NCBI GenBank assembly: GCA_963924565.1
Contig: OZ004612.1
Location: 28,582,001 to 28,646,000 of the forward strand
Origin: Ascidiella aspersa
Lineage: Eukaryota
Reading direction: 5' to 3'
Length of the DNA: 64,000 nucleotides
In this document: positions 808 to 45,800 of the stretch, in pieces
How positions within the stretch are numbered: the stretch's first letter is position 1
Layout: the number at the start of each line of letters is the position of its first letter
The notes under the pieces: model-generated
Seen by the model: only the letters and a program-made list of their open reading frames with translations
What the model was told of the DNA's origin: nothing
Databases searched by the model: none
Translations under genes and position numbers: made by a program

Positions 808-3800
808 GTGAGTATAGGAAAAGATTGTGAGATTGATTTTAAGCGTTAAATTTCTGCAGTTATATAAGTGGGATAAGGGCCGTTTTGCCTATGACGCAAC
901 ACAAACAGAATTTCATTTTTTATCTAAATTAATAAAAATAAAATTGAATTAAATTATGGTAAAATATTTATCATTGAAAATGGAACAAATGTGATCTGAA
1001 TATATGAAAACCCTTATAAAACCCTGATACGTAAACCAAAGGTATAAACTATAGTCTGGAGTTCTTAAGTGTCAATAGTATAGTATTTTAACTGTCAACA
1101 GAACTTTATCAAAAAAACAACAATTATTTCAATAAAAATTAATAAAAGTCAATAAAAACCCATTGAAACATTTGTTTAATCTTCCTACCCAGATGTTGTG
1201 TAAGGAGCTGAACCAAAAGAAAGAGGAATTCAGTGAATTGAGCAGCTGCCACCAGACTCTACCTCTCAGTCTGAGCGCAACAGAGCGCGAGAAGCTCCAT
1301 AGTGACGTCACAGACATCCAGGCGTTGTTCCGTCGCGCGCAATCGACCGCGAACGATAAGACGAACGCGCTGAACCATGCAATCGGCAGGAGGAAGGACC
1401 TGTGGGCTACGTCACAACAGGTAGACTGTTACGCAACAAAGGGAATTGTTACGGCTAATTTTGTTGTTTCCTTTTGAATTTGAAATTTCACGTGGCAAAA
1501 TATGTAAAATCATCTTAGATTAATGCCTTTTTTGTCTAATTCAAAAGCTGTAAATGCATTTTGCCCCTACATACAAAACAAATTAAAATTTATGTAATTT
1601 TTGGGCTTAACCTCATCAAAGTTGGTCGTTTATGGGATGTTTATAAAATAACTAGCTATAAAGAGTTTCAAATTCAATCTAAAAGTTACTGCTCTCTTTT
1701 TGAGGCCATTTTTTTCTTTCTTTACAGCGAGGCGAGTTTTATTATATTGTTGTGTTTTTATTGCAGGCTCTTGCATGGCTTGAGCATATCAAAGAAACGC
1801 TGGAAAAGTACAAGACGTTCCCGCTTCATCCTGATGCAGTGGCTAAACTTATACAAGAACACAGGGTACGATTGAGGGATTGCCAGTATTGCAGTTTTCA
1901 TAATATATACTTTTAATATGATTGAGACATCGTGTGATATAACTTTTAACAATATTAGTTTGCCATAAATGCGTTTTCGGTCCAAACTACGTTAGGTTTA
2001 AAAAAGGCATACGTCATTGTAGGAGTTCCCTTCTGAGCCTGCATAGCTCAGTTGGTAGAGCGACGGTCCCGGCTTGACCGGAGGTCGTGAGTTCGAACCT
2101 CACTGCAGGCTAGTTGTTTTTCTAGTCTGCCCTGCTTGCATCATAGATCAATAGACTCGGTGAGTCTGCGATGGCTTTCGGTGTACTTATTGTAGGAGAT
2201 GTTGTTTTTCAAATGGATTTCCAAAGGACTTTACAAAGAGAACATTTAATTTAGATTTTTGTTGTTTTTTTAGTTTAGGTTTGTCCCATTAACATTTTGT
2301 ATTTGAGGTTTGTCCCCAAAACATCTGATTTATGTAAACCCTATTTATGAAATTAAGTTTAAAGGTGGTTTAAACAAAACTTTTATTCCAGGTCTACTCT
2401 TTAAACTATGTTATTTCAAGATTTTTTTTGCTTAGTTGTTTAGGCGTTCTACATTTAAGCAGTAAGACACAAGTTTAGACTTAAAACCGAAAATAGAATT
2501 CTAAAATTGCGTTTCAAAATGTTCAGGTTGTCCCTTGAAAAGCGCTTTTGTAATGTCGAAGCTCTTTTAAAACATAACCAGTTTTCCAAACTTTTGTTGT
2601 TCTTTGTTTTAGGTTTGTCCCATAAAGTTATGATTTTTATTAAATACTATTTCCAAATGTATTTTTCAGGCGCTTTACAAGGAGATCGTCCGACACAAAG
2701 TCACAGTCGACGAGGTGATTGCAACCGGCATCCAGATCATCTACGAGGGCAAACCGGACAGCGTAAGCGTGCGAGGCAAGTTATCAGGTATAACCCCACA
2801 CTTTATTATGCCGTCATCACTGCTGACGTAGACGTGACGTGACGTAGCCGTGACGTGGTGGAAGCGTAGAAGTCGCTGCGACTTTTCTTCGTTTTTGTTG
2901 TGACCGTGGTGAAGGGTGTGGTAAATCTTTGTTTAGTTGTAGATTTTTTTAAATGTCCCCAGTAAGACCAAACTAAGTCCAAAATGTGGCAACGGAAAGT
3001 CATTTTGTTTTGATGTTAAAAAAATAAAATAACTGAATTTGAATTAAAACACTTATGGTGCTCATAGGTGTAAAGTATATTTATCTTAATATCTAAATAA
3101 AGTTCTTGACTCTTAATTCTACTTAGTTTGGTCTTTATTACTGAGTAAAAGAAACGAAAAATCAGTTTGTTTTAATGTTGAGATTACATTATTTCGAAAT
3201 AAGATATGACGATGCTCTCACAGATGTATGTTTCTTCTTTAAATCTAAATAAACTGATTTTCGGCTTTTACGTTTTCTACTTAGTTTGATCTTGTTCACT
3301 TGATGTACAACCTAAATCTTTGTTTCAAGCAGGTTTTTTCAATCATTCCATTCAAACAAAACTGTAGAATTTACCTTCCATTTGTTACAGCTTTATATTT
3401 CACTTAATGTCGTTTTGTTTCACAATGTTGCTTTGGTTTAGTGTTGCTTGTACTTTTTGTTGCGTTTTTGTGTTGTCAAGTTTCTTGTAGCTCTGTTTTG
3501 GTGTTTATACTGTATCACACATAGTTGCCTGAATATCAACTGAAAAGTTTGATACAAAAAGTAGAATATATCATTTTTCCGAGACAGAAACTTTCAATTT
3601 TTTTTTACTTTTGCGATAGTAATCGTAAAGGTTAAAAAGTTGGAATTAAGTTGCGCAGTTTTATTAAATTTTGTCATACCGTCTTTGATAAAATAGATAA
3701 CTTTTAATTTTTATTTAAATCAAAAAACAAATAATATAAGGGCTTTTGGCCAGTAAACAACGCCCTTATATTCTAAACATCCAGTAAAATAAAGTTTATA

Positions 3801-6800
3801 TATTCCAACATTTTTTACTGAACCCTTTCTACCAAAAAAAGTATCCCAATTAACGTCTACATTACTGATCGCATCGGACAGGCCTCGAAGATAGCTATGT
3901 CGAAGTGGATGAACTGTGGCGAATTAAACTGGATGAGCTTCAGCGTTTACTGGCAGACCGTGAGTTGTTTCATGCCGATGTAGATCACTGCTTACGTTGG
4001 CTGAAGGAGGCTGATATCGTGACCTTCCCAGAGGTCAACCTCGCCGCATCGCTGCCTGACCTTGAAACTCACCTTGGCCGATACGAGGTCGGTGAATGTA
4101 AAAAGTTTGCATGTCGTTGTTTGATCCGTTTTACATCGAAATTTACGATATTTCTATCGTCATAAATTGCTTCGTTTTTTTGTGAAAGGTTTTCATAACT
4201 TTACGTGGATATAAACATATAACCTTGGGCTATACCGAATCAGTACAAAGTGTGACAGTTTGTGCCATTTGTTTTTACGGATTTTACAGAATGACTTGGT
4301 TTTGTGTTAAAATATATTGCCCAGTTTATTGTGATGTCTATCATATCTTAAACTAAAATAAAGAATTCGGAAAATTGCTACGAATCCATACATCCTTTAA
4401 AATTAACAAAATATGTTCTTTTTTCTGTAAATTCAATAAATTTTTCTAGCACAGCTGGTTGCAATTTACCAAGAAATATAATATAATTAAAGCACAGCAC
4501 ATATGAGACCAAATTCTACCTTCTCTCACCTTAAGAAAAGTCGAGTGCTACATTAGAGGAGCACAAATGTCATCGCTCTTTATAAGGTAGTACACGATAT
4601 ATTGCTTTTCAGGCGATATTAAGCGAGTCCGTGAAATATCGCGACCTCGTATGTAAAGTTTGCGAGAAAGCGCAGGAAATTCTGCCGCAACTTTCCGACG
4701 TCGACCAGAGTCTGCTCACCGATAAAATGAAGAACATAAAGGATCAGTTCGAGCAGTAAGTCAAACTCAACTTAGAAAAACCCTGGATATGTTGTGATTT
4801 CATTCCAAATTCTAAACCTAAGTTGCATAAACTTAAAAATATATATAATTTGTTAAAGTCAATTCTGCCAAGTAACTGAACACCCTCATACAATCCTAGG
4901 ACGTTACCGATTTTCTGTTTACTACAACATTAATTGATACCCCATTTCTTAAGCGGGACTTTACATTTAAAATGTATAAGACTATTCAAAATTTACATTT
5001 CTTAAAATTATCATCGGTTTTTTTGGCAATAGTTTTCGTAAATTTCCCTACTAGATCAAGTAACTAAATTGGCAATGCTTGCATGAAATACTATTATTTA
5101 AGTTATTTGTGTAACGTCCTTAATAGCCTTATTTCGTGTAGCCAGTGGTTTAATTGCACTTAAAGTGACTTTTAACAAAATGAAATGCTGCTTTCCATGT
5201 TTGACAAAACCAACTAAAAATGCTGCTTTTCCATGATCAAATTATTTTGGTTTTTCTGTTTCGCTTCTGAATATATTGCTCACATAGGGATAATTTGTGG
5301 TTCAATAAACCAAATAATGAAGGCACAATGGCAAAAATAGTCCAACATAAAATGCAACGTATATAAACTGTTGCTTCCAAGCATGGTAATATAAATCAAA
5401 AACAGCTCTTCTGGTAATTTTAATTTTTTACCAACGTTTCGGCAACCTATGCAAGTCGCCTTCGTCAGGGTGAATAACACCAAACGCTCGTACAATAAAT
5501 AGAAAACACACAAAGGAAAAAAGCAGAAATCGGTGTCATTCACCCTGACGAAGGCTACTTGCATAGGTTGCCGAAACGTTGGTTAAGAATAGCAATTACC
5601 AGAGGAGCTGTTTGGATTTAAATAAAATTCAACGTGTTACATTTTTCAACCAAAATACCACTGTCTCCTACGTTCAACAATTTTTGCTTCTAGCATTAAG
5701 TAATGACTTGCAATTGCCTTTTAGTGTTTGCAAGTTCGCCGAGGACAAGTCTGATCAGATGCGAGAGATGATGTCATCGCGGAGGGAGTATATCCACTCG
5801 TTGGAACAGCTCGAGGATTACTTGGGTGTTGGTCAAACTATGCTCAGGGAACTAGATGATATGAGCACTGGACATACCGCTGGTCAAGCAAGGACATTAC
5901 TGCTCAAAGCTGAGGTAATGGTTCTGGATGTTTTTACGAATTTATCTCTTATGATAAATTCAAAGTTTGGCGATAAACAAATGCCAGCATATTTGTTACG
6001 TAATATTCGAACGTTACTACACATATAATATTCACTTGATAATCGGTTTTAAATTAAGTCTGTTACAATTTAATATATATTTTGAAAGTTGACAGCATGG
6101 CAGTTACATAATCTTCGCATGCAACTACAAATATGATATCAAATGTTTGGTATCTGCCTGAGCTAAAATTTATTTTTTACTTCAGTCCAGTACACTATAA
6201 TAAACATTTTTATCAACAAAAAAGCTAATGTAAGAAGTTACTTTGATTAAGCTTTAACGGATTTATTTATACCGTGTCAAAACCAAAATAACCCGAAACA
6301 TACAAATATTAAAAAAATATTGTTTACCTATAGATTAACAACGTATTAACTTCAAAGTTTCGTACGTTCTTTATTTATATGCAAACATAAGCCAAACTCT
6401 CTCAATGTCCGAAGCGCGAACAAAGTCGCCAAACATATTAAATATAAAGCCACTTGTTTACGATAAAAAACTGAAGGTTAATTATTTTATCCAACGTTTA
6501 ACACTTATTTTCGTTCGCAGAAAATCCAGCATTCGATCTCGGATCGCAGACCTAGTCTTGAGAAGATTGAAAAGATGAGAGATTGCCTCAGGGGATCCGG
6601 GCAACCATGGCAACCAGAGGAACTCCTTAAAGGTGGGACGTTATATTATGGTCGTTATGATAAATAAACTATCGTCAGCAGAAAATATGCGTAATTTAAG
6701 AATAATTGCCAGTGTTACAGAAATATTTTTCAGACGTAACAGAACCATTGGTGAATACTATAAAAAAAAATTTCGCTAAACAAAAAATATTGTATTGGTC

Positions 6801-9800: not shown

Positions 9801-12800
9801 CTTATATATATTGGGGTTGTTCGAAAAGCACTTTTTTGTCAAATTTTAGCGGGAACCCCCCTAGAGTTTATTCGTCTAAAACACAACAAGCCCCACCAGG
9901 TTGCATCGAAAATCCCCACAAACCAATTCTGAGCACGTTTGGTTCAGTTTAACTGTGCTACGTCAATTTTTAGTTTGATACGTGATACGTTGACAAAGTG
10001 TAAGGACATTTCCAATAAAATACGATTAGTAGGTTTATCAAATAACATGTCTGTTTTTCAATACACCAATTTACAATATGTTGAAATATGTTATATAAAT
10101 CCAAAAAAGCTAAACGAATCCCAAATCCTCTTTAGGTCGTATCGCAGCAACATTTTTTATGTTTTACTAAATTGTCTCGTAACTGTATGAAAACTCTTTA
10201 AAAAATCGCAAACAGCAACGTATCGTTAACTCACAAACCCCCCTGTGAACGTCAAGAGCGTTTGTTGGAGGCGCTACAATTGAACATAGAACCAGTTTCT
10301 AGCCTTCCATATCCACTTACAACATCCTACTCTTATGTACGCCTGTTTTCGCCCTGTTGCCTCCTATTGTGACTTAACAAGCACGCCATTGTTGCGCAGG
10401 AGCGTTTGTTGGAGGCGCTCGAGTCCCGTCAGCGTTACGCGGATTGCATGAGTCGAGTAACGAGTAAGCTGGGTAGTGCGAGTGCAGAGTTGCAACTACT
10501 TGAAGCCGACAGCAACCCTGAGCACGCGAGAGATCTACTTGAGCAACATCAGGTATGCACTATAAAGATATTTGTTTTATTAAATGGGATCTAGTTGTTG
10601 GTGTTGGTTTGGGTATAATTTACCCTGCTTTTCGTTATTAAAATACTAAACTGAGTAATTGATAATAAATTGCAAAGCCAAAAAAGTCGAGTTGATCGAC
10701 ATCATCTTGATTAAGTCGTTTCGATACAACTTGTATCATCTTCAGTTAATGTGGCACATTAACCTTTTTGGCTTAGCAAAATATTATCAACTACATTGCA
10801 GATCCGTGCATAGTACCTAATTAATTGATATTATATTGATTTTTGTTAGTAACAATTTTTTTTATAGTAATTTTGTTGTTACAATTTTAGGCCATTGGTT
10901 TTATCAAAAAATAATTTAAAAAGTTTGTATTTTTTAGAAAATTTGTAAGATGAAAGTAATTATTTTTTTCATCCATTTGTTTTGCAATCTTGTTTAACAG
11001 ATAATCCACTTTGTAAAAATGAATATGGGTATAATTTACCAAGTTGCTTAAAAAATTGTGAATAAAAACCACAACTACTTAATTTGGGTGCCGAAATAGT
11101 TTTTTAATTTGAAACCAATTGCTTTTAAAAGATTTAAAACAGTTAGATTTTCTATTTTGAATTATTTTTATTAATTCACAATTTTGTAGCTGCAATTCCA
11201 TTTTAATTTGTGCACATAATTGTAATTTATCATGCCACCGATTCAGGCCGACTACATGATCCACCAATATGAGGTAACTCAGCATGCATACATCGGTGTA
11301 TGTTAGTCCTATAGTATTCCGTTGCATGCTTTGAAAATAGCTTAGTTGTTAGAATGTAAGGTCATCATATCTAATGTAAACTATTACTTGTCGTCTATCG
11401 CAACCTTTCCTAAAATTACTATAAACAGATGTCATTAAAATGTATCAGTTTAGAAATAATGTTAAATCCAGTTTTCTGGTGCAATTAGTTTCACAAAGTT
11501 GCCCAAAAAGAAATTGGAAAACTCAATATTTTACTATTATATCGCTACAGAGTATTGCGTCATGAAACGTCAATCATTAGGTGGTAGTTTGAGTGTATGT
11601 ATTTTGACTTTATTCCTTTAAAGGTTTAGCGTTTTCAGAATAATGTCGTAATGCCGCGTAAGTTGCATGAACCCTATCTTTTACATTACTTTCTCAGTTT
11701 AGCATCACAGTTTGCTTCCTTTTTCTGAATATTATTTTACCATCTGACTTATATTTTGAGCATGATCGTTGGTTGTACGGTGCATGCGCAACTTTATGTT
11801 TGTGAATTTGAGTTCGCCTAACCGTCCGTTGAAACTGGACAGGTAAATTTGCAATAATTGGGGTAATGAAACTGTATGTTATAAAATGAAGAATACCAAA
11901 GAAACTTATCACAAAAATCTCAATACTTATATTCTAAGCTTCATTTTTTATTTCATATTTATATTTTATAATGCATTGTTACACTGATTTCACCAATTTG
12001 AATCAACTTCAGCTGGAATCAACTTGTACCAAGTTAAACCAGTTGAAATAAATTTATACCAGTTTAAGTCATTTTGATTTGATTTATTCCAAATTTGAAC
12101 CAATTTGTACCAATTATTGAAATCGGTTAAACGAAATTATATAACCTAAAAATACAATGTCGGAATCTACTTATAACAATTTGAACTAGTTTGATTAAAT
12201 TTATATCAGTTTAAATTATTTGTAATAAGACTTTTCGGTTTAAACCAATATAAGCCAATCTAAACCAACCTGTACCAATTTTAGTAGATGTCAACCAGTT
12301 TTAACCAACTTTACCAATTTAAATCAGTTTAATCGATACGATAACCAATGTAAAGCAATTTAATCGACACGACAAACGACAACTTTCCAGGCGCTTTTTA
12401 CGACCGAGGGAGAAATCCTTCATTACGTCGATGAACTTGAGGAGGTTGCGAATGACCTTGACAGCATGTCGGGAACAATTGGACTCACTAAGACGGCACG
12501 TGACACACTCTCTACCGCCGTTGGCGGCGTGAGGGAGCGTGCCGAGAATCTGCTAGATGCCGCTAAAGAGATACACAACAGTTTGCAGGTTGGTTGCCAG
12601 TGATCGAAATATTAGCAAATTTCTCAAAACAATTATAGGAAACCACTACGCACATTTTAAAATTAAAATATAAAATAATTTGTTCTCTTAACTGGGGTAA
12701 AATTTCTTTCAACACTAGTATAGCTGAGATTAAAGTTTTAGTTTTTAAAATGTAGGCTTTAATCGAATATTTAAAAACAGTTTGTGCCTTAAATTTAACA

Positions 12801-15800: not shown

Positions 15801-18800
15801 CCATATTTCATCTTGTGAAAAACAAAATGGAAATTTTTAAAGGGAATAAGTCAACGTTTCCTTGAAACATTAAACCTAATACTTTACAGCAACATAAGGA
15901 ATACAATAATAATAATTTAGCCATTCATTCCTAGTAATAGTACCCTTATTATATGTTTTCTTTCCTGCTAATGATCGGCATTGTAGAAAACGATCAGAAA
16001 AACATTAACAACTTTATGCGCTTTGATTTACTTTTTGTTAAATTGTCTTAAAAAGGAAAAATATTAGTGATTGGACGACGGGTGTCAACAAACCTCCACA
16101 AGCCTTTACATAATTTTCTCAAATTCATTGCTCTATACGTTTTCTCTACACCAATCAGGGCGACTCTTCACGCGCTCCAGAATGACGTAGCATCTGTGAC
16201 GCGTCGGTTGAGTACAGTGCACGACGCCGCACACACACTCACGGGGAGGCTGGACTCGCCTGTTAAAGGGTCGGTGCTGGATAAGGCTGAGGACATTGAA
16301 GATAGATGCCACAAGTAAGATGTTTATAGTGGATTTTCTTGGTTGATTTATAGTTTATAAGTTTGAGACTAACAACATCGATGCTAGATGCCACAAGTAC
16401 GATACGTTGATTTAAGCAGTATCCCTCTGCTAGAGGAGTTGTAATGTTCTCAAGTAAGGCGTTATTCTGATCTACCACTTAGTTATTTTTAGTTGCAAGC
16501 TCACGCTTATGCGTTTAACTACCTACAATTTATTCTTGCATTCGTCCCCACTTATAAATTCACTAAAACAACCTAGGTTTTGATAATAAATTGCAAAGCC
16601 AAAGAGGTCGAGTAGATCAACAGCATCTTGATTAGAATTTCGATACGAACTGGTATTATCTTCAGTTTATGTGACTGAGAAACAAATCAAAGCATCTTGT
16701 ATAAAAGCATAGGTTTTACTGGTAAAAAGTCGAGAGATTTTCCAGATAATAGCTTAAGAATCAACGCTGTAAACAATTTCTTCCAGACTTTCAGAAGCTA
16801 CTATTGTTCGACTTGCCGATGTGAAGGCCGAGATGCAATCACGCGAAACGTTGAACGCCGAACTTCGCGACATGTTGGTGTGGGTTGAAGATATGAGGGA
16901 GAATGCTGACCGCACACTGGACATTGCACCAGCACCTGGACATGTACAGGACAAACTAGACGCACTCAGACAGGTAAAAGCTGTGTGCAAAGAGGTTTCT
17001 ATCGAGGGTTATACATCAAGTGTAAACATGGTAACAAGGGATAGACAACTATGAAGAAAGCTATTTCTTGTTCAGGACAAAAACTGAAATAGTTAAAATT
17101 AATTTTTAATTGTTGGCCATGTTTGTTTGGCATTTTGGTATTGTATGTTCTGGTTCTTTTAAGCCGATTTTGGAAAGTTTTTAAACTTTCGTGAATTCTG
17201 GCTAAACTCAAAATGTATACAAAGAGTTTATGAAGAGAGGATTATCATTTTTCTCGCCAAACTATTGTTTTCTCTTTTCTGGCTGACTCATTAATGTTGT
17301 GTTTTTTGTGATATTAATTTAGTTTTCAAGTTAAAAAAAATAAATGTATCGATTCTGGAAGCTTTAAGGCGATTTTATAAAGCGTTAATTATGCTGTGCC
17401 TGTTTACATCGCGCAATTTATAAGTTTGACACTTAAAATAAAAACACTGGTCTGTAATCTTATTTAAAATGTTTCAATAAATCACATACCCACACTCAGG
17501 AATTATTAGGGTGGAGTGATTGAAACAAAATAGTTTAAAGAATAAAGCCGAATATCTTAATTCGTTTTAATGTCCATCCATTGCATATGATCCAACTCCA
17601 CAATGTTTCTTCCACAACAGTTGAAGGACCAGCTTTCAAACAAAGAAGGTCACTTCAACAAGATATCTGAGGAGCAGAGGCAGAAGTACCTCCAGAACTA
17701 CGCAATCCTCCCCGTTGAACTCTCCTCCACCATCGCAAAGATCAGGATTGCTCTGGCAGCTCTTCACCAAGAGCTGAGGAACAAAGAGGATGTGAGTTGA
17801 CGAAACTTCACTTACTTTAAAAGCTTAAAACAATGTCTATATCTGTTATATTTTGACTACAAGGATAATTTATTTAATTTTTTGCTTGTTTCTAACAAAT
17901 CAAAAAGCTGTTTTAAAATATATCCCAGTAATATAAAACTGAAGTGTAAGCATTTTTTTCATTTTTAACGTCTTGCCTTACAGACTCACTAAAACGCTTG
18001 TATTTTATAAACTTGGACAAAATTCCAATGTTATGACAGCTACCAATTTCGTTCCACCCCAAAATACCTAGTTTTTATCTCCAATTATAACATACTTAAA
18101 TGTAGGTTAAACGCATCCTAGTTAGGCTTTAATTATTATAAAATACTTATTTTAGCTTCAAGGTCGAATAAAAATTTTAATTTATTTTCTAATAAACAAA
18201 ATGAGCTTGAAAATAACGAGGAAATGACGAACTTGCCTTACACATAATTGCATCTTTATCTAGGAGCTGGAGTCGGCTCGCAACTTGCGTGAGGATTACC
18301 ACGATGAGCTGATGCAGATCTCCTCTCTCCTCACCGACACAGAAATGCAGCTCACTGAAGATCCACAAGATCAGGTTTCATCTAAAGACACACAAAGGGT
18401 GAGGATGCTTATGCTTGTAGAGCATGAATTTTTCTTGAAAGAATTTTGAACTAATTAATTTGAAGTTGATCGAATTTCGTCCTAAATTTTCCAATTCGGT
18501 TTAGATTACTTTTAAATTCTCGCCCCAATATTTCGATCCTAGAAAGATTATAAAATCAACTTTTTTAATCCGATATCCAAAGGGTAAGGCGGTTTGTGTA
18601 AGTCGGAACAATTTTAGGGACTAATTTTCGACTTATATTTTCGATTCTGGATGAAATGTTATACTAAATGTTTCCAATTCTGGATAAAAATACTTTGTCG
18701 CCTTCTAATCAATTTTAAACCGCGAATGTTTTTTTCACTCTGTAAGCTAACATGGCGAAATATTGTTTATTACACAGATGCTTAGTCGGTCACAATACCC

Positions 18801-42800: not shown

Positions 42801-45800
42801 TATCGACCTTAAGCGGGAATACGATGAGAAGGTTTTGGAGACGGACACTCGAGCCGACTCACTGAGATCAAGGGTCGCGCAAGTTGTTGGCGGGGATTCC
42901 GTGATCGAAAGCCCGCGGGATTTGCTCATGAAGGCTGAGGTAGGTAGTCCGACATTTTTGGAAATCAATACGCGAAACAGAATGAATATTAAGCCCATAT
43001 AGAAGTAGGTATTTTGTAAATGTTTGGAATAATTAAATCAATGTGGAGCCCAATAAAGAATTCGAAGCTTTCAAATTGCTACCTATACTCCTCTGTGTGG
43101 GCTATATATTCTACAACAGGGGTTCTTAAACTTGTTTTACCACGGACCTCTAATCTTTTTTTAGCTTTGCATGGACCCCGGTACGCAAGAAATGCTCCAG
43201 AATGACGTCACAATACAAATAGATTTCATAACTCTGTTTATTTCGGTCCGAAAAATGTGAAAGTTAAATGGAGTCTAACTATACATTCAGTGCAAAACCG
43301 TTTAATTTTTAATTAAAGTGTTTTCTTTGAAAAATTAATAACTTTTTAAGTGTACATTAGTTTTTTAATTAGGCCTTCATGGACCCCCTAAAACTAGTTC
43401 ACGGACCCCCAAGGGGTCCATGGACCCCAGTTTAAGAACCCCTGTTCTACAATCTCCAGCAATTATGCTCCAAAAATCTATATAATATTTCTGTTCTTTT
43501 CCATTGTTTCCAGGACGTTAATCTAAAGCCATGTATCTCGGTATCAACGCGATATGTTTTGTTTATTTTACAACTTTGGGTCAGCATTAGTTAAGTTGAT
43601 ATAATAAAACAAGGCGCTAAATAAAATATTTATTCCTCGTTAACCTTAATTTATTTCGGTGTTAGCGTGGAATTAGTTCAATACGATTTTTTAGGCATCC
43701 TAAAAAATATTTGATAAGGTTGTTGTCCAACAAAACTTATAAAATTTATCTGATATTTACTTAATAAAAAAATCAATTCCTAATATTTTTAAAAAAAGGT
43801 TGTGATGGGCTCGCAAAATTTAATGTTTACTGCATTTTTAAAAAGTGGAATAATATAGCTTGATAATAAATTGCATTGTTGACATTAACTGAAGATGATA
43901 CAAGCTCGTATCGAAACGTCTTAATCAAGATGATGTCGATCTACTCAATTTTGGCTTTGCAATTTATCATCAAGCTACATTACCGATCCGTGCATAGTGT
44001 ACCCAAATGCAATAATGTAACTTGTTTAACCTTTTATTACCTATTTAATTACAGAACACGCGTTACAGTTTAACCCCAAAAAACGAACCTTCAATTTCCC
44101 TATAATTACTAACTCACACCACTCCCATTTTTTGTTTGTTGTCAGGGTTTGGAGGAAACGTGTGAAAAGTTGCGGGTCGCCCTCACCACATTGGAAGGCA
44201 TTTGCTCGCGCGCTGAACAAGCTAAGCAAACACAACTGGCCGCCTCCATGGCTGCCAGCAACGCAAGGTAAAACAGAATTGGTTGTACCAATGCTTTAAG
44301 GTTAATATGGAAAAGCAGCATTTAGATATATACTATTATGAACGCAAGCTAGAAATACAGTTTACAGTCTTACGTTGTTCTCTGTTGATATAGGATAGGT
44401 TCTTTTTTGCACAACAATTCATCATTTTTAATTTTATCCAAGTTTTTAATTTATCCGTTTTGCTGGTATTCGAGCAACGCAAGGTAGATAGAAAAATTTG
44501 TTTATACGAGTTTATTCTGGATTATTTACGGTTTTAATGCTTTCAAGGCATTTCAGGAATCTGGTATTCAAGTGCTATTGATATTTACTTGAAAATGTCT
44601 AAAATACAGTTTGCAGTTTCGACGTGATAAAAAACAAATTTTCATAAACTAGAATTTTTGCAGAATTTGTTGCCTTGTCTATAAGCGCAAAGTTCCATAT
44701 AAAATTTGTGATTTAAAAAAAGAAATTTATTTAGTTATGTTTTTACTGCTTTGTGAGTGATACAAGTAATTCTGTATATTATATAATATTTAGTTTGAAA
44801 ATTTAGACAAGCCTATTTTCCGTGGTTTAGTTTGAGTAAATTTGCTTACAATTTAGACTTTCTGTTATTTTGGTAACAGAAAATTAAACTATACTTTATT
44901 CCAGTGTAGCTTATAAAAAATAAACTTGACTTGGTCAAAGTGTTTCAACGATTTAATAAAACTTTTTTATCTTTTGTTTATTTTAACAAAATTTGATTTA
45001 CATTTTAGTTATTACATGTTTCGTGTTATTTATCATTGGCGCAAATTCCCGTCCAACAGAATTTCCGCCAAAGTAGTTCGAATTATCCGCACTGCCAGAG
45101 TGGCGGTAGAGAGCATGCGCGAGTTGTCGACTATATCGGATGAGCTGAACGATAAGATCGGGTACATGGATGCCTGGATGAGCGAAGCGCAAAACACCGG
45201 AAAAGTAGAAGACGCTGCAAAGGACAGAAGAAGCATAGAAGTGAGTTTAAGATGTAAAACGTATCATTTAATGAATAAACTGAGGCATTTCAAAATTAAG
45301 CCTGATACTATTACAGCCACCATCATCGACTTAGTTTTAAAAAAGTTAACGATATTGAATTACTTTTAGTATAACATTTGTGATTTGTAAACAAAAATGT
45401 TCAAAGAATGCCTTAATATACATAATATGCTGTTTTTTGTACATTTCGGGTTTGTACAGTCATTGCCCAAACTATGTTTTCTCTATTTACCTTTGCTCCT
45501 AAAAGTTGCTGTCATTGAAGCGTTATTCAAAACTTTATATTGATTAGGACTATCATTATATTTATGTAGATAAGACTTTTTTGTTATTATTTGCGTGGTG
45601 AGTAAAAAGATATGAAAATAATTTCTAAAATATTGCAAAAAATAAAAAAAATGAGGGAAAAACTCTATAACAATTTCTAAATGAAGTGCTTTGAAAAAAT
45701 TTTTATTGCAGAACGATTTTTAAATACAAATTTTTTTTCTTTTAGCTATTCATATTAATAAAATGCTATTTAATAATAAAAAAGAAAACAAACACTTTAC

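What the first reader, a model, noticed from the sequence alone, without database searches (positions are those of the whole stretch)
43856..43998. Apparently intact self-cleaving hammerhead ribozyme on the sense strand of a nesprin intron
Seen: ATTAA-CUGAAGA-U-GAUAC(aagcuc)GUAUC-GAAAC-GUC^UUAAU has every core nucleotide, a 5-bp stem II, a bulged stem I, and stem III reduced to the palindrome ACGU. It sits inside a 20-bp inverted repeat. Known: minimal type-I hammerheads with a palindromic stem III are typical of Penelope-like retroelements and non-autonomous retrozymes, and often cleave as dimers. Inference: it lies in pre-mRNA orientation about 220 nt upstream of exon w57, so cleavage could cut the giant transcript or influence isoform output. 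It is the only family A copy here with an unmutated core.
Basis: partly seen in the sequence, partly recalled or inferred. Interest (0 to 1): 0.85.

Follow-up and report, generated by a model that had tools for sequence, protein, structure and literature searches.

The report
Dead Penelope retroelement end with mini-hammerhead
The hammerhead-ribozyme motif is really there, but it belongs to a 153-base stump of a Penelope-like jumping gene, one of well over a thousand such copies in this genome. It is a type of motif described in 2014 that barely cuts on its own, and nothing shows that it cuts the host gene's RNA.

Summary
Window 43884-43925 (+) carries a complete hammerhead core: CUGAAGA, GAAA, C17, a 5-bp helix II, a 5-bp helix I and helix III reduced to ACGU.

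The motif is the consensus of a repeat family with more than 1,500 first-look candidates in this 308.6-Mb genome. Longer copies (L048) show that the family is the 3' end of a Penelope-like element (PLE). The motif lies about 96 nt after the stop of an ORF whose relatives carry RVT_1 and GIY-YIG domains.

The window copy (43855-44007) is a typical dead PLE insertion. It has a 5'-truncated direct copy, a 21-nt inverted 5' piece, a 29-nt tail at one end only, and a 9-bp target duplication.

The motif meets the published hallmarks of the PLE "min-HHR" (Cervera and de la Peña 2014). These are an extra nucleotide between A9 and G10.1, a G10.1-C11.1 pair, a palindromic 15.2-16.2 pair and no loop 3. 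That class is reported as inactive when single and weakly active as a dimer.

In the genomic copies the core is kept no better than the loops. RNA reads span the predicted cut site at depth of about 400 with no pile of ends. The catalytic fold is about 9 kcal/mol worse than the best fold.

Regulation of the nesprin transcript is unsupported. This scan has already reported the same kind of element on other pieces of this genome.

The parts
43846..43854 (.). Left copy of the candidate 9-bp target-site duplication (TGGAATAAT).
   Evidence: Read. It matches 44008-44016 at 8 of 9. Other copies have clean 9-14 bp duplications.
43855..43875 (-). Inverted, severely 5'-truncated piece of the same element. 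It is the reverse complement of 43958-43978 and lacks the tail.
   Evidence: Inverted repeat found. The same architecture with different junctions occurs in other copies. The arrangement is described for PLEs in PMC8557442.
43876..43881 (.). Junction filler (TTGTTG) between the inverted piece and the direct copy. It is not family sequence.
   Evidence: It differs from the family consensus and from the fillers of L002 and L005 at the same junction.
43882..44007 (+). Direct, 5'-truncated copy of the 3' end of a Penelope-like element ('family A' unit).
   Evidence: Genome search gave 2,301 and 1,550 first-look candidates. Consensus built. The longer copy L048 continues upstream into the end of a GIY-YIG ORF.
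43884..43925 (+). Minimal type-I hammerhead motif (min-HHR). Helix I is 43884-88 with 43921-25. The core is 43889-95. The extra U is 43896. Helix II is 43897-901 with 43908-12. GAAA is 43913-16. The ACGU palindrome is 43916-19. C17 is 43920.
   Evidence: Hallmarks taken from PMC4209133.
43920..43921 (+). Predicted cleavage site. No cleavage has been shown.
   Evidence: The position follows from hammerhead numbering. RNA reads show no pile of ends there (table 6).
43979..44007 (+). 29-nt 'tail' present only at the 3' end of the direct copy and absent from inverted arms.
   Evidence: PMC8557442 describes a 30-40 bp tail at one end of PLE insertions.
44008..44016 (.). Right copy of the candidate target-site duplication (TGCAATAAT).
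44146..44268 (+). Putative host exon of 41 codons with AG/GT borders, 225 nt downstream of the predicted cut site.
   Evidence: Sequence read. It is not confirmed by RNA: depth was 0. A KASH exon lies downstream on the same strand.
10659..10814 (-). Second family A copy. Its motif is broken: U16.1 is A and loop II is one base shorter.
16580..16672 (-). Third family A copy, decayed.

Best explanation
Window 43855-44007 is a dead-on-arrival, heavily 5'-truncated insertion of a Penelope-like retrotransposon (PLE) in an intron of a KASH-domain (nesprin-type) gene.

Shown: the element's reverse transcriptase copied only the last 126 nt or so of the element RNA, and an inverted 21-nt piece sits at the 5' side. 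The result is the two-armed insertion with a one-sided tail and a target duplication that is typical of PLEs. The hammerhead motif is part of the element's 3' region, about 96 nt after the ORF stop in longer copies. It is of the PLE 'min-HHR' type, with no helix III of its own and an ACGU palindrome.

Inferred: the inverted piece was probably added by a snap-back step during insertion. In the active element the motif most likely works, if at all, only when two copies pair through ACGU in tandem or multimeric element transcripts. In this single, isolated intronic copy it is a passive passenger of the pre-mRNA and does not cut it to any meaningful extent.
For: Motif and hallmarks:
- The motif has an extra nucleotide between A9 and G10.1, a G10.1-C11.1 pair, a palindromic 15.2-16.2 pair and no loop 3. 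All four are named in PMC4209133.
- Two other families in the same genome share this architecture with different helix sequences. One is next to GIY-YIG ORFs (L063-L074, L087). The other is in the window at 5433-5580.

Family size and consensus:
- The family has 2,301 and 1,550 first-look candidates.
- The family consensus equals the window motif.

Link to a PLE ORF:
- L048 carries 81 open codons ending 96 nt before the motif.
- The peptide has 86 relatives. Some have PF01541 over the matched stretch, and P0016 has RVT_1 with the match at its C-terminus (46% identity, E 1e-18).
- The peptide is found at 370 or more places in the genome. Open frames reach 309 aa in the same family and 848-880 aa in a family at 54% identity.

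Insertion anatomy:
- Target duplications are 9-14 bp long, and element lengths run from 142 to 580 nt.
- The junction between inverted and direct arms differs from copy to copy.
- A tail is present at one end only.
- All of this matches PMC8557442.

Passivity:
- In copies selected by their flank, the core is kept at 0.857, loop II at 0.837 and helix II at 0.85. There is no compensatory change.
- The hammerhead-compatible fold scores -3.7 to -6.5 kcal/mol against an MFE of -15.6.
- RNA run X3 has depth of about 400 across the site from family copies on both strands, with no pile of ends and no back-joints.
- PMC11167929 likewise found no reads ending at a PLE hammerhead site and found cleavage unnecessary for insertion in vitro.
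Against: - No full-length family A element with RT was held.
- The family A unit shows no DNA similarity to the 30 GIY-YIG loci that were fetched.
- The RNA test is at family level, uses 6% of one run, and had no reads on this locus's unique flanks. Weak or tissue-specific cleavage is therefore not excluded.
- Rfam hammerhead models do not score the motif.
- Helix II has 5 bp, shorter than the 7-8 bp reported for the Schistosoma min-HHR families.
Confidence: 0.87

Rival explanations
1. The motif is an active ribozyme that cuts the nesprin pre-mRNA co-transcriptionally, alone or by pairing in trans with other family A RNAs through ACGU, and so lowers or reshapes output of the long isoforms.
For: The motif is complete and lies in the sense orientation, 225 nt before a putative exon. 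Family A RNA is present in the transcriptome on both strands, so partners in trans exist.
Against: - Single min-HHRs showed no detectable cleavage, and dimers only weak cleavage under non-physiological Mg (PMC4209133).
- The catalytic fold is about 9 kcal/mol worse than the MFE.
- No ends pile up at the site in about 400-fold family coverage.
- About 20% of more than 1,500 copies have the same motif, with no extra conservation of the core.
- The insertion is a random truncated copy with a chance junction.
Confidence: 0.04
2. Family A is a non-autonomous retrozyme-like mini-element that propagates as a small RNA processed by its hammerhead, possibly as a circle. It would then not be merely truncated PLE copies.
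For: Many copies are only 142-167 nt long. A few loci have two direct units close together (L052, L023). The preprint 10.64898/2026.07.22.740005 argues that animal retrozymes derive from PLE pLTRs.
Against: - Junctions between arms differ from copy to copy, so the short forms are independent truncations, not copies of one short master.
- Copies end about 85 nt past the hammerhead site rather than at it.
- Longer copies run into the PLE ORF.
- No back-joints appear in the RNA reads.
Confidence: 0.06
3. The motif is a chance look-alike inside a fold-back DNA transposon or MITE.
For: The element has terminal inverted repeats and no Rfam hammerhead hit.
Against: - Target duplications vary from 9 to 14 bp, the two ends are asymmetric and one carries a tail, and the inner junctions vary.
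- There is continuity with an RT/GIY-YIG-type ORF.
- Three unrelated families share the same unusual core architecture.
- The pattern is 4 observed against 0.14 expected by chance.
Confidence: 0.02

Closest known systems
Minimal hammerhead ribozymes (min-HHR) of metazoan Penelope-like elements (Cervera and de la Peña 2014, PMC4209133)
   Same: Type-I topology with a full core. One extra nucleotide between A9 and G10.1. A G10.1-C11.1 pair. No helix III or loop 3 of its own, with a palindromic 15.1-16.1 stretch (ACGU) fit for dimer pairing. Short helix I. Located in the element's terminal repeat region. Thousands of dispersed genomic copies.
   Different: Helix II has 5 bp with a 6-nt loop, against 7-8 bp in the Schistosoma families. 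The helix sequences are specific to this family. Activity was not measured here.
Canonical EN+ Penelope-like element insertions (Evgen'ev and Arkhipova 2005; Craig et al. 2021, PMC8557442)
   Same: Strong 5' truncation. An inverted 5'-truncated copy abutting the direct copy. A tail of about 30 bp at one end only. Target duplications of variable length. No poly(A). A C-terminal GIY-YIG ORF end upstream of the repeat.
   Different: Only the last 126 nt or so of the element is present in the window.
Non-LTR retrozymes of animals (Cervera and de la Peña 2020, PMC7229834)
   Same: Type-I hammerhead with a weak helix III. Non-coding short copies. A probable PLE origin.
   Different: Retrozymes are tandem arrays of 170-400 nt units that give abundant circular RNA. 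Family A copies are dispersed, two-armed and variably truncated, and no circular joints were seen.
Rfam Hammerhead_1 (RF00163)
   Same: Same catalytic core and type-I topology.
   Different: The model expects a helix III hairpin. It scores neither this motif nor the PLE-linked motif of L064.

Membership tests
PLE min-HHR (Cervera and de la Peña 2014) | Conserved core CUGANGA ... GAAA with an H17 cleavage nucleotide in type-I order | tested here: met
   CUGAAGA at 43889-95, GAAA at 43913-16, U16.1 at 43919, C17 at 43920.
PLE min-HHR (Cervera and de la Peña 2014) | A nucleotide inserted between positions 9 and 10.1 | tested here: met
   U at 43896. Families B and C of this genome have an A there.
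PLE min-HHR (Cervera and de la Peña 2014) | G10.1-C11.1 pair closing helix II | tested here: met
   G43897 with C43912. It is GC in 57 of 74 copies.
PLE min-HHR (Cervera and de la Peña 2014) | No loop 3, with palindromic 15.2-16.2, so that helix III forms only between two motifs | tested here: met
   ACGU at 43916-19 with zero loop. Family C has AGCU and family B has ACGU.
PLE min-HHR (Cervera and de la Peña 2014) | Location in the terminal repeat (pLTR / 3' region) of an element encoding RT plus GIY-YIG | tested here: met
   L048 has the motif 96 nt after the stop of an ORF end. Its relatives carry PF01541 and RVT_1. The RT of this very family was not seen.
PLE min-HHR (Cervera and de la Peña 2014) | Self-cleavage (weak, dimer-dependent) | tested here: inconclusive
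   No pile of read ends at 43920/21 in family-level RNA-seq. Folding disfavours the monomer.
Penelope-like element insertion | 5' truncation with an adjacent inverted 5'-truncated copy and a one-sided tail of 30-40 bp | tested here: met
   Window 43855-75 is inverted, 43882-44007 is direct, and the tail is 43979-44007. Junctions vary in 11 copies. Described in PMC8557442.
Penelope-like element insertion | Target-site duplication of variable length, no poly(A) | tested here: met
   Duplications of 9-14 bp in at least 12 copies. The window copy matches at 8 of 9.
Penelope-like element insertion | Single ORF with RT and C-terminal GIY-YIG in full-length copies of the same family | tested here: inconclusive
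   Only the EN C-terminus is held. Open frames reach 309 aa at 91% identity and 848-880 aa at 54% identity, by coordinates only. No further genome letters could be fetched.
Rfam Hammerhead_1 / Hammerhead_3 and related models | Score at or above the gathering threshold of the covariance model | tested here: not met
   No hammerhead family at E up to 10. RF00163 gave 0 matches genome-wide, with 74 of 39,749 candidates scored. The control PLE motif is also missed.
Animal non-LTR retrozyme | Head-to-tail tandem units giving unit-length circular RNA | tested here: not met
   Copies are dispersed and two-armed. There are no back-joints in RNA reads. Only two loci have nearby direct units.

The most novel reading that the evidence does not exclude
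Abundant family A transcripts, which are present on both strands, could supply in trans the second ACGU partner that a lone intronic min-HHR needs. Sense-oriented copies such as this one would then be cut at a low rate, giving a genome-wide, ribozyme-based drag on genes that host sense copies. The giant nesprin transcript would be a large target.
Probability: 0.03. Interest if true: 0.6.

Novelty: new member of a known kind. Interest (0 to 1): 0.14.

Why it matters
The finding adds one well-dissected family to the known class of Penelope-linked minimal hammerheads. It also gives a clean worked example of the two-armed, tailed insertion form, in which each copy has its own junction.

It does not open a new question. 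The function of these motifs in the Penelope life cycle remains unknown in the literature, and this locus gives no special handle on it. Its practical value is for annotation: such motifs in introns of this genome should be read as transposon debris, not as host regulatory ribozymes.

Tried and rejected
- Rfam cmscan found no hammerhead. It was run at gathering threshold on the whole window, at E up to 10 on 1 kb, and on 91 nt. It also misses the PLE-linked motif in L064, so the blank is not informative.
- RF00163 over the whole genome gave 0 matches, but only 74 of 39,749 candidates were scored.
- BLAST of the family A unit against 30 GIY-YIG loci found no similarity. The parent is a different PLE family from those fetched.
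- My first strict regular expression for min-HHRs in those loci found nothing. A looser scan then found family C.
- Pfam on the 81-aa L048 peptide alone gave no domain, and tblastn against the held PLE loci gave nothing. The link was made through the representative-protein search instead.
- Pfam on seven window ORFs or exons gave no spectrin or nesprin domain. Host gene identity rests on the KASH exon downstream.
- The test of core against flank conservation among copies showed no excess. This is expected for dead copies, so it argues neither for nor against function in the active element.
- Read laying gave zero RNA depth on the unique intron and exon, so host expression, splicing and locus-specific cleavage could not be assessed.
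- Fetching full-length family A copies was not possible.
- The idea that the short forms descend from one short master element was rejected because the junctions differ.
- The reading 'reciprocal deletions of a double-hammerhead ancestor' (s1-807440) was rejected for the same reason.

Full report
**1. The observation**

- Helix I is ATTAA at 43884-88 paired with TTAAT at 43921-25.
- The core CTGAAGA is at 43889-95.
- One extra T is at 43896.
- Helix II is GATAC at 43897-901 paired with GTATC at 43908-12, around the 6-nt loop at 43902-07.
- GAAA is at 43913-16.
- The palindrome ACGT is at 43916-19 in place of helix III.
- C17 is at 43920, so the predicted cut is at 43920/43921.

The flanking inverted repeat is 25 nt at 92%: 43851-75 against 43958-82. 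A loose core pattern gives 4 hits in the window against 0.14 expected, and no shuffle of 100 reaches 4.

Rfam does not recognise the motif at any threshold tried. RF00163 found nothing genome-wide among the few candidates it scored. The same library also misses a hammerhead that sits next to a Penelope ORF in this genome (L064). The blank therefore reflects the models, which expect a helix III hairpin, and not the sequence.

**2. What the repeat is**

The 146-nt stretch has 2,301 first-look candidates in the 308.6-Mb genome. Its hammerhead-free 3' half has 1,550. The consensus of 90 units is identical to the window motif.

Copies come as two outward-facing arms. One arm is an inverted piece that starts near the unit's 3' end. 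The other is a direct copy that alone carries a terminal tail of about 29 nt (L006, L010, L048).

Target duplications of 9 to 14 bp flank elements of 142 to 580 nt. An alignment of eleven short copies shows that each has its own junction between the inverted and direct parts. In some copies the direct part begins inside loop II or after the hammerhead. These are independent, variably truncated insertions. They are not copies of one short master and not deletions of one fold-back ancestor.

**3. Link to a Penelope-like element**

In L048 (12-bp duplication) the two arms enclose about 260 nt. On the sense strand this stretch is open for 81 codons and stops 96 nt before the motif.

The peptide alone has no Pfam hit. 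A full HMMER search found 86 relatives, mostly matching at their C-termini. P0006, P0044 and P0031 carry the GIY-YIG domain over the matched stretch. P0016 carries RVT_1 and matches with its last 76 residues (46% identity, E 1e-18).

In the genome the peptide is found at 370 or more places. Open frames reach 309 aa at 91% identity and 848-880 aa in a family at 54% identity. GIY-YIG hits are plentiful, with 62 or more and frames up to 816 aa.

The family A unit is therefore the 3' end of a Penelope-like element.

**4. The window copy**

The element spans 43855-44007:
- Inverted piece: 43855-75.
- Six filler letters: 43876-81.
- Direct copy: 43882-44007, with the tail at 43979-44007.
- Flanks: TGGAATAAT at 43846-54 and TGCAATAAT at 44008-16.

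Craig et al. 2021 (PMC8557442) describe this structure for Penelope-like elements. They report high 5' truncation, an adjacent inverted 5'-truncated copy, and a 30-40 bp tail at one end.

DNA contigs of two other runs cross both junctions, so the insertion is present there too (table 8).

**5. The motif class**

Cervera and de la Peña 2014 (PMC4209133) defined the Penelope 'min-HHR'. It has no helix III or loop 3, a palindromic 15.2-16.2 pair, a conserved extra nucleotide between 9 and 10.1, a G10.1-C11.1 pair and a short helix I. It occurs massively in metazoan genomes. As a single motif it showed no detectable cleavage, and as a dimer or trimer only weak cleavage.

The window motif meets each sequence hallmark. 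Two further families in this genome share the architecture with different helices:
- Family C is CUGAUGA-A-GCAC...GUGC-GAAAGCUU. It lies about 185 nt after the stop of GIY-YIG ORFs and often occurs on both strands.
- Family B is in the window at 5433-5468 (-) and 5545-5580 (+).

This agreement between families, with changed helix sequences, is the real evidence that the motif is a selected feature of the active elements.

**6. Does it cut here?**

Nothing says so.
- Among copies chosen by their flank only, the core is kept at 0.857, loop II at 0.837 and helix II at 0.85. The region as a whole (0.85) is no better kept than the downstream unit (0.878), and there are no compensatory pairs. Of these 42 copies, 9 have the identical 32-nt motif, so hundreds of equal copies are expected genome-wide.
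- The hammerhead-compatible monomer fold scores -3.7 to -6.5 kcal/mol, against -15.6 for the best fold, which pairs core letters.
- The RNA run of the same species (6% read) had no read on the unique intron or on the exon at 44146-44268. About 400-fold coverage from other family copies, on both strands, crosses the site with no pile of ends and no back-joints.
- A 2024 study of an active Penelope-like element likewise found no reads ending at its hammerhead site, and found cleavage dispensable for insertion in vitro (PMC11167929).
- The other two family A copies in the window are antisense to the gene and broken. No cis partner for a dimer exists nearby.

**7. Host gene**

The genome's single KASH-domain match lies at C6:28665771-28665947 (+). 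That is 19.8 kb beyond the window's end on the same strand. This supports a nesprin-type gene on the + strand. Pfam found no domains in the window's larger open frames.

**8. Verdict**

The Penelope link is confirmed. The regulatory inference is not supported. The element is an ordinary member of a known kind.

Earlier follow-ups of this scan reached the same reading for other families on other pieces of this genome. I did not rely on them, but my results agree with them.

Noticed in passing
window 5433-5468 (-) and 5545-5580 (+): A second, unrelated min-HHR family forms a head-to-head palindrome: CUGACGA-A, then an 8-bp helix II, then GAAACGUU. It has the same Penelope-type architecture, and both arms have intact cores.
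   Followed up: partly
window 43347-43440: Another very high-copy repeat lies 400 nt upstream. RNA reads on it show a 3:1 strand bias (165 against 487). This suggests the library is stranded and that this family is transcribed mainly from one strand.
   Followed up: no
window 2036-2112 (+): A tRNA-Ala (GGC) gene or tRNA-like module scores 55 bits with Rfam and is also found by ARAGORN. It lies inside the gene region. Earlier notes on this genome describe tRNA-bearing Penelope-style mini-elements, so it may belong to one.
   Followed up: no
window 17774-17809 (+): This is the fourth match to the loose core pattern (CUGAGGA ... CGAAACUUC). It has no G10.1-C11.1 pair and no clear helix II, so it is probably chance or a decayed copy.
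   Followed up: no
L001-L060, 3' ends of family A copies: Most copies end in ...GTGTACC followed by CAA or CA. The target duplication often starts with CA(A) itself. This suggests microhomology or a target preference at the priming site.
   Followed up: partly
L052 1438-1754; L023 1501-1889: Two direct family A units lie close together, either as partial tandems or as separate insertions. This is the only arrangement in which two sense hammerheads could pair in one transcript.
   Followed up: no
L010 1440-1800: The flanks of this family A copy are themselves inverted repeats of each other. The copy may have inserted into another palindromic element.
   Followed up: no
window 44270-44525: One DNA contig of run X2 replaces 254 bases just after the putative exon with 38 other letters. 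This looks like an indel polymorphism in the next intron.
   Followed up: no
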